This document shows, piece after piece, positions 7,800-47,415 of a stretch of DNA of 47,608 nucleotides. How positions within the stretch are numbered: position 1 is the stretch's first letter; every line of letters starts with the position of its first letter. The notes under the pieces were generated by a model, which was not told the origin of the DNA, searched no databases, and saw only the letters and a list, made by a program, of their open reading frames with translations. A program made the translations under genes and the position numbers. The stretch is from Octopus bimaculoides (lineage: Eukaryota). The stretch lies in assembly GCF_001194135.2 (NCBI RefSeq), contig NC_069001.1, forward strand, positions 8,882,140-8,929,747, read 5' to 3'.

Positions 7800-7831
<32 letters not shown>

Positions 7832-8455
7832 CGACGGGCTTCTTTCAGTTTCCGTCTACCAAATNNNNNNNNNNTATATATACGACGGGCTTCTTTCAGT
7901 TTCCGTCTACCAAATCCACTCACAAGGCTTTGGTCGGCCCAAGACTATAGTAAAAGACAATTGCCCAAGGTGCCCATTCCTGCATCTATATATACATATA
8001 TATCTTTATCTTTTACTCGTCTCGGTCACTAGGCTGTGGCCATGCTGGGGCACTGCCTTGAAGAACTTTCAGTCAAATGAATCAATCCCATTACTCATTT
8101 TTTTCTTTTTGAAGCTTAGGTCTTGGTCTTTTGAGGGTCTTTTGCCAAACCTCTTAGTTACAGAGACATAAGCACAACAACATCAATTGTTAAGTGGTGC
8201 TAGAAGACAAACAAACAGACACACACACACACACGACAAGCTTCTTTCATTTTCTATCCAACAAATCCACAAGAAGACACTTGCTCAAGGTGCCACACAG
8301 TAGGACTGAACCTTGTTTCTTTCTGTGTTCCTTTCTGTTGAAGAGCGTAGGCTCGAAACATTAAAGAATTTCTCTATTCCTGAGCGATATACTAATACAT
8401 ACATTTGTTGTTTACACCACCTGTCTTCGTCTGTTGTTTTTTTTTCGTAAATTCT

Positions 8456-11900: not shown

Positions 11901-13067
11901 TGTACACACATACACACACACACACACAAAATGTATGATATTGTTAAAAAATATCTTTATCTAGTAAATTCAATCTAGTTGTTCTTGACAAGTTGATATA
12001 CATATTTGCTCGGTTGGCTGGTTTTAAACAGCTAGATCGGCTCATATTTTTATGTTTTTAGTAAAGTCTTGTCTCAATTTACAAAAGAAAGACAATCTAC
12101 AAAAGAAAGACATATATATTATATAATAGAAGTGTCATTTTAGCCATTTAACAATGCACCCTATTTGTTACATTCATGTTAATCTATTTATTCCTCTATG
12201 GTATTATTTCCTGTGATGTGTCATAATGCTTTATTACACTTCAGTGAGGTTGTCATTACATAATTCCACTGCATCTACAAAAAATCAATTACTGACCAGA
12301 TTTTATATGCCTCTATTTTTTTCTTTCTCTGTTCATTTTGTTATGTTTCTAATTTCATTCACTTGAAATAGAACTCATAATGTATGTTTAAGTTGTTGAA
12401 ATTAACTACTCTCATATAACAACAGATTTAATAAAAAAAAAAAATTGTTTTTTTTTTTCTGTTATTAAATGCTTAACATGACTCTTTGATGAGGTAATTG
12501 TCTCAATCTCAGGTCAGGTTTTTAAACTGGCATGACCATGTGTTAAGAAGTTTGCTTCCCAACCATATGGTTCTGTGTTAGTCCCACTGTGTGGCACCTT
12601 GGACAAGTGTCTTCTACTAAGGCCTTGGGCTGACCAAAGCCTTGTGTGTGGATATGGTAGATGGCAATTGAAAGAAGCCTATCATATATATNNNNNNNNN
12701 NNNNNNNNNNNNNNNNNNNNNNNNNNNNNNNNNNNNNNNNNNNNNNNNNNNNNNNNNNNNNNNNNNNNNNNNNNNNNNNNNNNNNNNNNNNNNNNNNNNN
12801 NNNNNNNNNNNNNNNNNNNNNNNNNNNNNNNNNNNNNNNNNNNNNNNNNNNNNNNNNNNNNNNNNNNNNNNNNNNNNNNNNNNNNNNNNNNNNNNNNNNN
12901 NNNNNNNNNNNNNNNNNNNNNNNNNNNNNNNNNNNNNNNNNNNNNNNNNNNNNNNNNNNNNNNNNNNNNNNNNNNNNNNNNNNNNNNNNNNNNNNNNNNN
13001 NNNNNNNNNNNNNTCTAATGACTGAAACAAGTAAAAGATAAACTAAAACTCTGAGATAAATAAATAA

Positions 13068-38561: not shown

Positions 38562-39807
38562 ATATATTTATATATGTGTGTATGTATGTATATATTTATA
38601 TGTATATATATTTATGTATGTATATGTAAGCATTGTATGCATCTATGCATGCATATATCAACCATCATTTATGCTTGTTTACCTGTTCCAGCCAATCAGC
38701 TGCAGCCATGCAGGGATGTTCCCATTACTGTCACTTTTAATTTGTTATCACAGCCATTCTGTGGGTGATTTTTGGTAAATGGAGGAATTGGATATTCACT
38801 TTCTTTATTTGTGTTCTTTTCTGTAATGTAGGTTTATTTGGGCCCTCTGATAAAATGATATCTAGGTATTTTTTTGAATACACTTATCTCCATCCCTTGT
38901 ATATTTCTTTTGTGTTTTTCAGGGTAGGTATCAAAAAGTAGTGGGACTTTGAGCCATGAGCTGTTACAGTATTGGGTCCTTCTTCTAGATAAAGAGGATT
39001 GGGGCTTTGGTACTATGCAATGGAATCTTGTTTGATGATTGGTATAGTTTTCAGTCCCTAATTTTGGCACAGAATTTTCAAGATCTTATCTCTCTACCTG
39101 CCTACGTGCGAATTTGTGTGTTTTTGAGTGTATGTATAAATCTTTGTGTTAATGTATTTGTGTGTGTGTGTGTGTGTGTGTAAATATGTCAACAATCCCT
39201 TCTAAGAATATAGTTTTTTGTTTCTGTTTTATCATTGTCCTGTCACAGTGTAAAGATGGCTTGTTTGTCTACTTCAGTTTTCTGGAGTACTTAGCTCATT
39301 CTAAGTTTCTAATATTTCAGAGATTTTTACTTCCGTTATTATCAATAGATACAGGAAGGCCAAAGAGTTGGGGGTTACAGTGTCCATTCATGCAGGTGAA
39401 CAATAAGGGCAATGTTTTCTGAGTAAATTCACTATTGTCTTGCACTGAGGTTTATTCTCTTTCATTTCTTTGTTGGTTTATCCTGTCTAAGAAAGTTCAG
39501 ATCAAATTAGTAGTGACCCTTATTCTATTTATTTTCGTTTTAATTACTAGTCAGTCACTAATTCTCTGTGTTCTTGATGTTGGAGAGTGGCTGACTAATT
39601 TTATTTGACAGTATCAGTTTTGCCAATATATATATTTTTTTGCTGAACTGTTAAGTTATGGGGATGTAAACACACCAATATCATAGGTCTGCTCAGGTTA
39701 ACAACAAGAACAATAATATCTAGAGTTTACCAAGTTTTGATACCATTTCATTTCTTTTGATATAGAATTATTTGAAGCAATCGACCTTTTTCTTTTCTAT
39801 TTTATAG

Positions 39808-39897
39808 TGCTTCATAAACGGAAGAAAAGGGGAAAATTCAGTGCTATTGGTCCCTTAGCCCTGTGGCATGCTTGTCAGAGTATAGTAAAAGATGATG
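39808..39897 (+). CDS. GNL1: GNL1 exon, (V)LHKRKKRGKFSAIGPLALWHACQSIVKDD
   Basis: TTTTATAG acceptor, GTAAGT donor, 90 nt, phase 1/1. Basic patch plus xGPxxLxxAC like human GNL1 VLKKSRRRGRGWTRALGPEQLLRAC. Confidence 0.9.
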
Positions 39898-39999
39898 GTA
39901 AGTATTATATTTTAATCTATATTGTTTGCTATTAATGCATTTTGTCTGAGCCAAACAAACAGTCTGAGCTCAGACTGTTTGGCCATGTTGTTTGATTTT

Positions 40000-40220
40000 C
40001 AGAGTTAGGCCTTGCTTATTGTGTTCTCTGAAGATCTGGCTGGGCAGACACCTCGTGTAGGTCAACCACAAGCTGCATGGCCACAGTGGCTGAGAACGTA
40101 TCTTACAGAGATGGGACTCTGCTCAACAAGTTACCTGGGAGGACCTGGGAATAAACCAACAAATGGTGAATGACCCACATGTTGCAACGGTGCATTCCCC
40201 CCATACCTGTCCTGTCCTTA
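40000..40220 (+). mobile_element. Decayed LINE 3' end, RTE-like
   Basis: Peptide ...GQTPRVGQPQAAWPQWLRTYLTEMG resembles RxRGRPxxxW ORF ends; tail CCCCCATACCTGTCCTGTCCT. Recognised from memory only. Confidence 0.45.
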
Positions 40221-40485
40221 CCTGAATACATTTTTGTCTCTGCTTCTAATATTTTATTTCCTTATTGTTCTTTCTCATCTCATGCTTACAAACTGGAAGC
40301 ATTATTGGGATCTGTGTTTAAGGTTGGTTTCTGTAGCACTGATGCAGACATAGCTGTGTTCTTATGAAGTTTGCTTTGCAGTCACATGACTCAAGGTTTT
40401 ATTTCTCTCTATAGCATCTTGTGTAAAATAAAAAGAGACAAAAAAACTATAAAAATGTGGATAGTAGATTAGTATTGTGTTCTCT

Positions 40486-40581
40486 GAAGCAATTGACTTT
40501 TTCCTTTTCTATTTTATAGTGTTTCATGAAGGAAAGAAAAAGGGGGAAATTCAGAGCTATTGTCCTTTGGATTCATTATGA
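40486..40581 (+). pseudogene. Degenerate local duplicate of the GNL1 acceptor and exon start at 39774-39858 (pseudo-exon)
   Basis: 31/34 identity over the acceptor region, about 41/52 over the exon part; reads VFHEGKKKGEIQSYCPLDSL* (TGA 40579-40581). Confidence 0.85.
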
Positions 40582-40916
40582 GTCCATCAGAATGAATTTT
40601 ATTTTTCCTAACTGTTCTGATATCTTCTCTCTGGATTGTTGGATAAATTAGATACATAGATACTGCACAGCAGAACTGAACTCAAAACCATGTGGTTACA
40701 AAGTGAGCTTCTTAACCGCAGAGTTATGCCTGTGCCTATGACCAGTAAAATATGATTGTTTAAGAGATCATGCTTATAAAATGTACATGAACTGTTCACA
40801 CTTGCCCTTTGATACTTCACCCTCTGTCCTTTAAACAGTTATCTGTTACCCCATTGTCAATGCCAGAAGAAACTTGTTTCTAAACTAAATATTTATTTTA
40901 TTGTCTTTTATTGAAG

Positions 40917-41066
40917 TTGACCTCTCGTCTTGGAAGAAGAAGATTGAAGCTAACACTGGCGCAGATGAATCAGATCTTGTCTCCACCGTCCACAATGATG
41001 TACTTGACACCTGTTTCCAGAAACACGTACGCTACAAAGACGGTGTCGTTACTCTAGGATGTATTG
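40917..41066 (+). CDS. GNL1: GNL1 exon, (V)DLSSWKKKIEANTGADESDLVSTVHNDVLDTCFQKHVRYKDGVVTLGCI
   Basis: TTGAAG (AAG-type) acceptor, GTAATG donor, 150 nt, phase 1/1. VDLSSW and RYKDGVVTxGC match GNL1. Confidence 0.95.
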
Positions 41067-41256: not shown

Positions 41257-41309
41257 GTTACCCTAATGTAGGCAAATCTTCTTTGATGAATGGACTGGTT
41301 GGCAAGAAG
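41257..41309 (+). CDS. GNL1: GNL1 exon with G1/P-loop, (G)YPNVGKSSLMNGLVGKK
   Basis: TTTGACAG acceptor; GxxxxGKS motif; 53 nt, phase 1/0; weak donor AAG|GTTGTG. Read-through hits TAG at the 11th codon. Confidence 0.93.
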
Positions 41310-44888: not shown

Positions 44889-45379
44889 TGTTATTACTCT
44901 CCAAAATCTATGTTCCAGTATTTTTCCACTCTTATGCATACCTCACATAAATATAACATCTACATACAATTTTGGATTTCTGGAATAAGCAGATGTACTT
45001 CAAGAAGACATAGCCTGGATTATAACTATCTACATAATACATACATACATGCATGCATACTTATATATGTGTGTGTGTCCTTCTCTACCATTTGGGAATT
45101 GGTGTTAGTTTGTTTACATCCCGTAACATAGACCATGAAAATGAGTATTGGGGTTGTGACTAAACCTGCCAAGGCAGTTCCCCAGCATGGTTGTGGTCCT
45201 ATGACTGAAAAAGGGAAAAAGAAAAAGCTAGACAAAATGTCTTCTTAGTTCAAATCGGCTGTGGGCTATTATAGTAGAAGACACTTGCCCAGGGTGCCAT
45301 ACAGTGGGACTGAACTTAAAACCATGTGGTTGGGAAACAAGCTTCTTAACTGCATGGCTTGCACCTAGATGAAATTGTT

Positions 45380-46694: not shown

Positions 46695-47149
46695 GTAAGA
46701 AATCTTAACAATTACTATTTAAAAAGCTTTTATTCTTTTCCAATTATGGCTTTGTTTGAGTATTCAAGGTTGGATTATAATTGACAAGATTTTGAGTCTC
46801 TGAATCTTGAAGGAGCTATTTCTGCAGGAGATTTAGCTTTTAGCCACAGAACTTTCAAATTCTCTGATAAGTCATCTACAACAACAAGAAACCTTTCATG
46901 CAGAGCCTCAGTGACTTTTAGGAGAAAAAAAAAGAGGAAGAAATCATGACTTATAAATTGTTGTTGTTGTTATTGTTTTGTTTAACCCTAGGTTAGGTCT
47001 GTAAGCAAGGGTATTCCAACCATCTTTTATCTTTTATTTGTTTCAGTCATTTGGCTGTGGCTATCCTGGGGCACCCACTTGAAGGAGTTTTAGTCGAAAA
47101 GATACATATTTTTTTCTTTTTTTTCTCTATCTTTTGTATCTAATTGCAG

Positions 47150-47415
47150 ATTTCTGGAAGAACCATGCTGAAACAGAAGTGCTAAAAACTATGCAAAGCC
47201 AACACCAGCAGCGGAGAAGATCATCATCTTCAGATTCTTCTATTGTGTCAAATGTTAGCAGCGATGATGATCTTAGCTCTGATGAAGGCGCCAAACAGTT
47301 GGAAAAACAACAGAGTCATGTATCGAAGAGCAGATGCTTTGCCACTAAACAGGATGGAGACAATGAGATCAGCCTTATTTCTAAGAACCCTTTCTTAAAT
47401 CTAGATTCAGACTAG
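47150..47415 (+). CDS. GNL1: GNL1 last coding exon, (D)FWKNHAETEVLKTMQSQ...ISKNPFLNLDSD*
   Basis: TTGCAG acceptor in correct phase; W..H.ET start and terminal NPF..L motif like human GNL1 (WESHPET...RNPYALL); TAG at 47413-47415. Confidence 0.92.

What the first reader, a model, noticed from the sequence alone, without database searches (positions are those of the whole stretch)
40473..40581. Chimeric, locally templated decoy acceptor / poison pseudo-exon inside GNL1
Seen: this ~110-nt segment is stitched from two nearby templates. TATTGTGTTCTCTGAAG (40473-40489) is an exact copy of 40017-40033. It overlaps by the microhomology TGAAG with a copy of 39774-39858, the real acceptor and first half of the exon at 39808. 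The copied acceptor is better preserved (31/34) than the copied coding part (~41/52, with one insertion and one deletion). Spliced in phase 1 it reads VFHEGKKKGEIQSYCPLDSL then TGA, upstream of the P-loop. It sits ~400 nt before the true next acceptor, which is a less common AAG. Inference: the junction resembles template-switch repair (MMBIR or Pol-theta templated insertion), and the retained acceptor could feed unproductive splicing/NMD or a truncated isoform, tuning GNL1 dose. The higher acceptor identity could also just reflect low complexity.
Basis: partly seen in the sequence, partly recalled or inferred. Interest (0 to 1): 0.7.

Follow-up and report, generated by a model that had tools for sequence, protein, structure and literature searches.

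The report
Decayed partial exon copy in intron
An intron of an octopus-type GNL1-like GTPase gene holds a decayed copy of the previous exon's splice acceptor and first half; it is an ordinary relic of local duplication, probably split later by an inserted DNA block, with no evidence that it regulates the gene.

Summary
40485-40568 copies 39773-39856, the acceptor and first half of the 90-nt exon 39808-39897, at 87% identity (E 5e-21). The 17-mer TATTGTGTTCTCTGAAG occurs exactly at 40017-40033 and 40473-40489.

The two 17-mers flank a 439-nt block (40034-40472) that contains a tRNA-derived SINE copy and an A-rich stretch. That looks more like a 17-bp target-site duplication from a later insertion beside an existing exon duplicate than a one-step, two-template synthesis. 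I could not settle this. The block's first 304 nt have no other copy in the window and no database match, and its last 13 nt are not a clean tail.

Microhomology-mediated copying remains plausible for the exon duplication itself (TGAAG; 12/17 imperfect homology).

The acceptor core (-16 to +2) is identical to the real one, and a moderate donor exists at 40703, so cryptic or poison splicing is feasible on sequence. Nothing shows use or selection: acceptor versus coding identity gives p = 0.15, and the copy has frameshifts and a stop. No cephalopod comparison or RNA data were reachable. Interest is low.

The parts
39761..39777 (+). 17 nt just upstream of the duplicated parent segment (TATAGAATTATTTGAAG). 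It matches the 17-mer at 12/17 positions, including the terminal TGAAG.
   Evidence: family D1 runs through it; P(>=12/17) = 2e-4, and 7/12 outside TGAAG gives p = 0.02; 7/12 is also lower than the 87% of the core copy (p = 0.013-0.027).
39773..39856 (+). Parent segment that was copied: putative branch-point region, polypyrimidine tract and AG (to 39807), plus the first 49 nt of the exon.
39808..39897 (+). Authentic 90-nt phase-1 exon encoding LHKRKKRGKFSAIGPLALWHACQSIVKDD, with donor ATG|GTAAGT.
   Evidence: The encoded AIGPLAL region aligns with a homologous GTPase (P0001, 44% identity over 161 aa).
40017..40033 (+). First copy of the exact 17-mer TATTGTGTTCTCTGAAG.
   Evidence: D7.
40034..40472 (+). 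439-nt block enclosed by the two 17-mers, the candidate inserted DNA.
- 40034-40200 is GC-richer (0.52), with a frame open to TGA at 40171.
- 40338-40459 is a short tRNA-derived SINE copy (sense) with AATAAA at 40428 and an A-rich stretch.
- The last 13 nt are GATAGTAGATTAG.
   Evidence: The first 300 nt have no other copy in the window. No Pfam, Rfam or protein-library identity was found.
40473..40489 (+). Second copy of the exact 17-mer, directly abutting the duplicate. It overlaps the duplicate by TGAAG.
40485..40568 (+). Decayed duplicate holding the pseudo-acceptor (AG at 40518-40519) and the pseudo-exon start (from 40520). It has 11 substitutions and 2 single-base indels relative to the parent.
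40579..40581 (+). In-frame TGA that ends the phase-1 reading of the pseudo-exon.
40700..40708 (+). Best candidate donor downstream of the pseudo-acceptor, AAA|GTGAGC (GT at 40703). It lies inside the antisense SINE head and would make a 183-nt cassette, 40520-40702.
   Evidence: 5/9 matches to CAG|GTAAGT, against 5-7/9 for the real donors.
40600..40758 (-). Antisense copy of the same short tRNA-derived SINE (head about 40758-40661). With the sense copy at 40338-40459 it brackets the 17-mer and pseudo-exon as an inverted repeat. The left boundary is approximate.
   Evidence: E 2.6e-15; the arms pair in the MFE fold (z = -1.84).
40917..41066 (+). Next authentic exon, with an AAG acceptor and TTG|GTAATG donor. 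The P-loop exon follows from 41257.

Best explanation
This is a non-coding relic, a pseudo-exon. It most likely arose in two separate steps.

Step 1 (partly shown). About 84-98 nt holding the 3' splice site and the first half of the 90-nt exon 39808-39897 were copied into the following intron. The copy landed right after the sequence TATTGTGTTCTCTGAAG. The join lies at a shared TGAAG, within a 12/17 imperfect match. That fits a short backward template switch or slippage at microhomology. The copy then decayed to 13% divergence, with two frameshifting indels and a stop, and with no copy of the exon's second half or its donor.

Step 2 (inferred). A 439-nt DNA block (40034-40472) later inserted at the 5' edge of the copy and duplicated 17 bp of target. 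The block has a GC-richer 5' part, a short tRNA-derived SINE copy, AATAAA and an A-rich stretch. This would make the exact 17-mer pair an insertion scar, as LINE-type target-primed retroposition leaves, rather than a second template.

Function. Most likely none. The copy keeps an intact-looking acceptor only because it is young and pyrimidine-rich. At most it acts as a cryptic 3' splice site producing rare stop-containing transcripts that would be degraded.
For: - The duplicate is real and highly significant.
- The parent exon is the conserved one, because AIGPLAL aligns in a homologue. The copy reads VFHEGKKKGEIQSYCPLDSL* with frameshifts.
- Homology does not extend beyond the 84 nt on either side.
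- The exact 17-mers sit precisely at the two ends of the 439-nt block.
- 17 bp is within the 7-20 bp range of LINE-mediated target-site duplications (established knowledge).
- The block carries a sense SINE copy, AATAAA and an A-rich run near its 3' end.
- The window is saturated with retroposons, about 25 copies of one SINE family in 47 kb. Octopus genomes have active RTE LINEs (PMC9115989).
- With the block and one 17-mer removed, the 17-mer lies in register with 39761-39777 at 12/17.
- The 17-mer pair is undiverged (0/17) while the exon copy is 13% diverged (P = 0.09 if coeval).
- There is no selective signal on the acceptor (Fisher p = 0.15).
- Local RNA folds are not unusual.
Against: - The block could not be shown to be mobile. 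Its first 300 nt have no second copy in the window and no hit in Pfam, Rfam or a 1.8-billion-protein library. Two metagenome scans were empty.
- The SINE homology ends at 40459, so the last 13 nt before the 3' 17-mer (GATAGTAGATTAG) are neither SINE nor poly(A). A clean retroposition hallmark is therefore missing.
- GC content already rises upstream of 40017 (0.43 in 39941-40016), so composition does not mark a sharp left boundary.
- The 12 nt of the 17-mer outside TGAAG match the parent flank only 7/12. That is lower than the core copy (p = 0.013-0.027), so the 17-mer is not clearly part of the duplicated homology.
- The acceptor is sequence-identical to a working one from -16 to +2, and a usable donor exists at 40703. 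Some splicing into it cannot be excluded.
Confidence: 0.45

Rival explanations
1. A single repair or replication event (MMBIR, FoSTeS or Pol-theta-type templated synthesis) inserted about 98 nt at 40472/40571. It copied 17 nt from 40017-40033, then switched at the TGAAG microhomology to 39778-39858.
For: - Both pieces have nearby direct-orientation templates, and the internal junction has a perfect 5-nt microhomology.
- Multi-template insertions with 2-12 bp microhomology are documented (PMC8421209).
- The 98-nt segment lies between two inverted copies of a short SINE that can pair. Such inverted repeats are a plausible fork-stalling context.
- A perfect 26-nt palindrome lies 36 nt upstream of the first template, hinting at other template-switch-like events here.
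- The 439-nt block lacks clean mobile-element hallmarks.
Against: - The left outer junction has no microhomology...CCTTGCT before 40017 versus ...AGATTAG before 40473.
- The 17-nt piece is 17/17 identical while the 84-nt piece is 87% identical, although both would be the same age (P = 0.09).
- The 7/12 match of the 17-mer to 39761-39772 would have to be chance (p = 0.02).
- The exact flanking of a discrete block by the repeat is what an insertion scar predicts.
Confidence: 0.25
2. Whatever its origin, the retained acceptor is a selected regulatory device, a decoy or poison exon. It would divert splicing to stop-containing, NMD-targeted or intron-retaining transcripts to set GNL1 dose.
For: - The 3' splice-site core is identical to the authentic one from -16 to +2. 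Pyrimidine content is 18/22 in both, and the next real acceptor is a weaker AAG.
- A GTGAG-type donor at 40703 would give a 183-nt cassette with an in-frame stop.
- All three intronic differences are pyrimidine-to-pyrimidine.
- Decoy exons that act through their splice sites are known (PMC6097662).
Against: - Acceptor preservation is not significantly above the coding part (p = 0.15).
- Three pyrimidine transitions are expected by chance, because 9 of the 11 substitutions across the whole copy are transitions.
- The original strong donor was not copied or kept.
- There is no unusual RNA structure.
- Known decoy and poison exons are highly conserved, which could not be tested.
- There is no expression evidence at all.
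Confidence: 0.07
3. Remnant of a 256-nt tandem duplication of the whole exon with its flanks (unit 39761-40016). The second unit later lost its exon 3' half and donor through decay and insertions.
For: - With the 439-nt block and one 17-mer removed, the two copies start exactly 256 nt apart.
- The second unit would end near the 3' end of the antisense SINE, giving units of 256 and 260 nt.
- A collinear weak alignment shares CAGAGTTA.GCCT at both unit ends.
Against: - Global and local alignments of the remaining 160 nt are not better than shuffles or than random window segments (p = 0.12-0.25).
- nhmmer does not detect a SINE at 39950-40016.
- 87% identity dropping abruptly to background is not expected from uniform decay.
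Confidence: 0.08
4. Assembly artefact. The 17-mer repeat, or the placement of the block, results from mis-joining in a draft assembly.
For: The window is a gapped draft (13 N runs). It shows artefact-like duplicates flanking gaps: 41 nt at 7824 and 7875 around a 10-N gap, and 63 nt at 18518 and 19382 around a 454-N gap.
Against: - There is no gap between 38058 and 42347.
- The exon copy is 13% diverged with indels, so it is not a collapsed or duplicated read stack.
- A 17-nt overlap is shorter than the k-mers assemblers typically use (general knowledge).
Confidence: 0.03

Closest known systems
Intronic pseudo-exons left by local (tandem or near-tandem) exon duplication
   Same: A degenerate copy of a neighbouring exon with its splice site lies in the adjacent intron, in the same orientation. 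Its reading frame is broken, and the parent exon is the conserved one.
   Different: Only the acceptor and the first half of the exon are present, with no donor. The copy is separated from its parent by unrelated sequence and a later insertion, so it is not a clean tandem unit.
Target-site duplications flanking LINE-mediated retroposed insertions (SINEs, truncated LINEs, retrocopies)
   Same: Perfect direct repeats of 17 bp lie exactly at both ends of a discrete block of a few hundred bp. The block's 3' part carries a sense SINE, AATAAA and an A-rich run, in a genome rich in such elements.
   Different: The block is not demonstrably repetitive. It is composite, with a unique 304 nt, a SINE and 13 nt. 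It does not end in a clean poly(A) or microsatellite tail.
MMBIR / microhomology-mediated templated insertions (PMC8421209)
   Same: There are nearby templates in direct orientation, a 5-nt perfect microhomology (12/17 'microhomeology') at the junction of the exon copy, and a possible two-template structure.
   Different: One required junction shows no microhomology. The two templated parts differ in divergence. The event is old and fixed, so the junctions are blurred.
Decoy exons and poison exons (PMC6097662; PMC7373989)
   Same: It is an intronic element with a strong-looking 3' splice site, a possible 5' splice site and an in-frame stop, inside an intron of about 1 kb.
   Different: Known examples are defined by junction reads, U2AF binding, reporter assays and high conservation. 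None of these is available here, and the donor is only moderate.

Membership tests
Pseudo-exon from local exon duplication | Significant similarity to a neighbouring exon, including its splice site, in the same orientation | tested here: met
   87% identity over 78-84 nt, E 4.8e-21.
Pseudo-exon from local exon duplication | The copy has lost coding capacity while the parent is the conserved exon | tested here: met
   The copy has two frameshifting indels and a TGA at 40579. The parent-encoded AIGPLAL aligns with homologue P0001.
Pseudo-exon from local exon duplication | Not part of the mature mRNA | not testable with these tools
   No transcript data were available.
Target-site duplication of a retroposed insertion | Direct repeats of about 7-20 bp exactly flanking the inserted segment | tested here: met
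   17/17 exact at 40017-40033 and 40473-40489, enclosing 439 nt. Only 1 of 2000 shuffles gave any exact 17-nt repeat.
Target-site duplication of a retroposed insertion | The inserted segment is a mobile element or retrocopy, with other copies or a recognisable identity | tested here: inconclusive
   40338-40459 is a SINE copy. 40034-40333 has no other copy in 47 kb and no Pfam, Rfam, protein-library or metagenome hit. A whole-genome search was not possible.
Target-site duplication of a retroposed insertion | Poly(A) or simple-repeat tail abutting the 3' repeat | tested here: inconclusive
   AATAAA at 40428 and an A-rich run reach about 40456, but the last 13 nt are GATAGTAGATTAG.
Target-site duplication of a retroposed insertion | Empty site with a single copy of the repeat in relatives or other alleles | not testable with these tools
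   No cephalopod genomes are in the reachable collections.
MMBIR / multi-template templated insertion | The inserted sequence copies nearby templates | tested here: met
   Templates lie 456 and 712 nt upstream.
MMBIR / multi-template templated insertion | Microhomology at each template-switch junction | tested here: inconclusive
   The internal junction has TGAAG (5 nt). The left outer junction has 0 nt. The right junction is blurred by divergence.
MMBIR / multi-template templated insertion | All templated parts are of equal age | tested here: inconclusive
   0/17 differences in the 17-mer against 11 substitutions plus 2 indels in 84 nt. P(0/17 at 13% divergence) = 0.09.
Decoy or poison exon | Competent 3' splice site | tested here: met
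   Positions -16 to +2 are identical to the authentic acceptor, and pyrimidine content is 18/22 in both. This is a sequence-level test only.
Decoy or poison exon | Competent 5' splice site within exon-definition range | tested here: inconclusive
   The best candidate is AAA|GTGAGC at 40703, 5/9 to consensus against 5-7/9 for the real donors. The parent's GTAAGT donor was not copied.
Decoy or poison exon | Premature stop on inclusion | tested here: met
   TGA at 40579-40581 in phase 1. All three frames have stops before 40916.
Decoy or poison exon | Junction reads, increased under NMD inhibition, and cross-species conservation | not testable with these tools
   No RNA-seq and no related genomes were available. 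The internal proxy of acceptor versus coding identity is not significant (p = 0.15).
GNL1 (YlqF/YawG-type circularly permuted GTPase) as host gene | G4 motif (NKxD) upstream of the G1 P-loop, and an MMR_HSR1 domain | tested here: met
   LNKFDL is encoded near 23640, upstream of GYPNVGKSS at 41257 onward. Pfam MMR_HSR1 matches at E 7e-6. PDB relatives are Nug1, GNL2, GNL3 and LSG1. Assignment to GNL1 specifically, rather than a paralogue, was not tested.

The most novel reading that the evidence does not exclude
The pseudo-acceptor is a selected decoy or poison 3' splice site. It would have been created by a microhomology-mediated, multi-template repair event in the loop between two inverted SINE copies. 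The cell would use it, possibly under control of the SINE-SINE stem that loops it out, to divert a fraction of GNL1 pre-mRNA into stop-containing, degraded transcripts. That would be a clear case of a regulatory splice element born by local templated repair.
Probability: 0.05. Interest if true: 0.5.

Novelty: new member of a known kind. Interest (0 to 1): 0.15.

Why it matters
If the two-step reading is right, this is routine intron turnover: a partial exon duplicate later split by an insertion. It matters mainly as a caution. An exact short repeat next to a duplicated segment can mimic a template-switch junction when it is really an insertion scar.

It also marks a strong cryptic acceptor that gene-model builders and RNA-seq aligners could mistake for an alternative exon of this GTPase gene. 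Only if the acceptor proved to be used and conserved would it say anything about how unproductive-splicing elements arise.

Tried and rejected
- **Cross-species comparison.** A protein search with 163 aa spanning the three exons returned only 3 distant hits, at most 62% identity, and no cephalopod. I therefore could not fetch orthologous loci. Two metagenome DNA scans, one with a block 23-mer and one with the acceptor/exon 24-mer, found nothing.
- **Identity of the 439-nt block.**
  - Pfam on three frames found nothing, and Rfam gave only a chance hit.
  - HMMER of the 45-aa open frame against 1.84 billion representatives gave two hits. Both are tandem-repeat artefact proteins scored over 5-6 stretches, so I rejected them.
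  - nhmmer and tblastn of the block against the window found no second copy.
  - My recollection that the peptide resembles a LINE ORF2 C-terminus therefore stays an untested lead.
- **Homology beyond the 84 nt.** I tested the left flanks, the right flanks, the right flank after removing the antisense SINE, and a global 160-nt comparison. None was better than shuffles or real-sequence controls. I do not accept the 256-nt tandem-unit model.
- **Target-site duplications of other SINE copies.** I looked for these to calibrate typical length. None was convincing, because the main SINE is composite with an internal microsatellite and its ends are unclear. Candidate decayed duplications around the two short SINE copies were not significant (p = 0.2-0.3).
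- **Third copy of the 17-mer.** A degenerate copy at 40303 (11/17) occurs at background frequency, about 1.4e-3 per position. I treat it as chance.
- **Local RNA hairpins.** Pairing of the polypyrimidine tract with the purine-rich exon start gives z-scores near 0 for both the real and the pseudo copy. I rejected it as a feature.
- **tRNA scan.** ARAGORN found no tRNA genes.

Full report
**1. Host gene**

The window is AT-rich (34% GC) draft sequence with 13 N gaps. On the plus strand it carries exons of a circularly permuted GTPase.
- An exon ending at 23792 encodes ...LILILNKFDL... (G4 motif).
- The 90-nt exon 39808-39897 follows, then exon 40917-41066.
- An exon starting at 41257 encodes GYPNVGKSS (P-loop).
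- The concatenated peptide hits Pfam MMR_HSR1. Its PDB relatives are Nug1, GNL2, GNL3 and LSG1.
- It aligns at 44% identity over 161 aa with a homologue, and the alignment includes the residues encoded by 39808-39897 (AIGPLAL).

A GNL1-like identity is therefore reasonable. I did not test assignment to GNL1 rather than a paralogue.

**2.

- 40485-40568 is a copy of 39773-39856 at 87% identity, E 4.8e-21, with one 1-nt insertion and one 1-nt deletion.
- The intronic part is 31/34 identical. The coding part is about 41/52.
- The 17-mer TATTGTGTTCTCTGAAG is exact at 40017-40033 and 40473-40489. Only 1 of 2000 shuffles of the 3-kb region gave any exact 17-nt repeat. Complex exact repeats of this length within 2 kb are rare in the whole window.
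- Read in phase 1, the copy gives VFHEGKKKGEIQSYCPLDSL then TGA at 40579-40581.
- The copy is 13% diverged, and there is no assembly gap between 38058 and 42347. It is therefore not an assembly duplicate, although such artefacts exist at gaps elsewhere in the window.

**3. Extent of the duplicate**

Homology does not extend beyond the 84 nt. I compared the left flanks, the right flanks, the right flank after removing a SINE, and a global 160-nt stretch. None beat shuffles or real-sequence controls.

The second half of the exon and its strong donor (ATG|GTAAGT) have no counterpart in the copy. A 256-nt tandem-unit model is attractive on spacing, with units of 256 and 260 nt once the block is removed. 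The alignments do not support it.

**4. What surrounds the copy**

The window contains about 25 copies of a tRNA-derived SINE (nhmmer). Its true orientation puts a tRNA-like head first, followed by a body and a microsatellite.

A short relative of this element, made of the head plus an A-rich stretch, occurs three times:
- 40338-40459, sense strand;
- about 40758-40600, antisense strand;
- 16025-16138.

The first two bracket the 17-mer and pseudo-exon as an inverted pair. They pair with each other in the minimum-free-energy fold of 40320-40760 (z = -1.84).

**5. The 17-mer: insertion scar or second template?**

The two exact copies sit precisely at the ends of a 439-nt block (40034-40472). The block has these features:
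- a GC-richer 5' part (0.52), with a frame open from the 5' edge to TGA at 40171;
- the sense short SINE;
- AATAAA at 40428 and an A-rich run.

Points favouring a later insertion that duplicated 17 bp of target:
- Perfect direct repeats of 17 bp enclosing a discrete block are what LINE-type target-primed insertion leaves (7-20 bp; established knowledge).
- The genome is rich in active retroelements (PMC9115989).
- If the block and one repeat are removed, the 17-mer lies directly upstream of the copy. It is then in register with 39761-39777, which it matches 12/17 (P = 2e-4; 7/12 outside TGAAG, p = 0.02).
- The 17-mer pair has 0/17 differences against 13% for the exon copy (P = 0.09 if the same age).
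- The left outer junction required by a one-event model has no microhomology.

Points against the insertion reading:
- I could not show the block to be mobile. It has no second copy in the window and no Pfam, Rfam or protein-library identity. The two protein-library hits are repeat artefacts. The metagenome scans were empty.
- SINE homology stops at 40459. The 13 nt that follow are not a tail.
- GC content rises before 40017.
- The 7/12 match is also lower than expected if the 17-mer were fully part of the 87% homology (p = 0.013-0.027).

I put the two-step history (local copy, then insertion with a target-site duplication) at about 0.45.

In both histories the exon copy itself begins at a TGAAG, or at a 12/17 'microhomeology'. 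Such junctions are typical of template switching (PMC8421209).

**6. Function**

Sequence features that make splicing feasible:
- The pseudo-acceptor core is identical to the real one from -16 to +2, and pyrimidine content is 18/22 in both.
- The next true acceptor is an AAG.
- The best downstream donor is AAA|GTGAGC at 40703, 5/9 to consensus against 5-7/9 for the real donors. It would give a 183-nt cassette with an in-frame stop.

Unproductive splicing is therefore possible on sequence grounds.

Evidence for use or selection is absent:
- The higher acceptor identity is not significant (p = 0.15).
- The substitutions are mostly transitions throughout the copy.
- Local folds are unremarkable.
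- Conservation and junction reads, the defining evidence for decoy and poison exons (PMC6097662), could not be examined.

I rate a selected regulatory role at about 0.05-0.07.

**7. Verdict**

This is a real but ordinary feature: a decayed partial exon duplicate (pseudo-exon) in a retroposon-rich intron. The apparent chimeric junction is most simply read as an insertion scar. It is a new instance of a known kind and of low interest unless expression and conservation data say otherwise. The decisive test is an empty-site comparison in related octopus genomes.

Noticed in passing
window 40338-40459 (+) and about 40600-40758 (-): Two copies of a short tRNA-derived SINE lie in inverted orientation and bracket the pseudo-exon. 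They pair in the predicted fold of 40320-40760 (MFE -107.6 kcal/mol, z = -1.84), looping out the pseudo-acceptor. This could be an ADAR substrate or a structure that hides the cryptic site. I did not test either idea.
   Followed up: partly
window 39956-39981: A perfect 26-nt palindrome, CAAACAGTCTGAGCTCAGACTGTTTG, lies in the intron 36 nt upstream of the first 17-mer. GTCTGAGC is also repeated at 39944 and 39962. There is no other copy in the window. It may be a fold-back template-switch product or a small hairpin element.
   Followed up: no
whole window, e.g. 34598-34789, 19394-19613, 12522-12692, 28801-28973, 31772-31943, 45196-45376: About 25 copies (nhmmer E < 1e-3) of a tRNA-derived SINE. 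It has an A/B-box-like head, a conserved body and a (TG)n/(TA)n microsatellite. At least four copies continue with a further conserved module (...CCCACCACTACTTGACA...GTTCAGCA), so the element is composite.
   Followed up: partly
window 7824-7864 / 7875-7915 and 18518-18580 / 19382-19444: Exact 41-nt and 63-nt duplicates flank N gaps (a 10-N gap at 7865-7874 and a 454-N gap at 18928-19381). They look like gap-edge assembly artefacts of a draft assembly.
   Followed up: no
window 40700-40708: A GTGAG-type candidate donor (AAA|GTGAGC) lies inside the antisense SINE head. This is the kind of site through which antisense SINEs become exonised.
   Followed up: partly
window 13459-13489 / 13871-13901 and 21733-21892: Other complex exact repeats: a 31-mer, TGCAAGTGGCTGAGCACTCCACAGACACGTG, 412 nt apart, and a tandem of about 115 nt near 21733-21892. 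They probably belong to further repeat families.
   Followed up: no
window 47083-47412 (+): An open frame encodes a serine- and acid-rich peptide (...RRRSSSSDSSIVSNVSSDDDLSSDEGAKQLEKQQ...NPFLNLDSD). It may be a C-terminal exon of the same GTPase gene. I did not check this.
   Followed up: no
window 39785-39798 vs 40530-40543: The purine run at the start of the pseudo-exon is 13/14 complementary to the polypyrimidine tract of the real acceptor 730 nt upstream, and also to its own tract. This follows from a K/R-rich exon sitting next to a pyrimidine tract. The local folds are not significant.
   Followed up: yes
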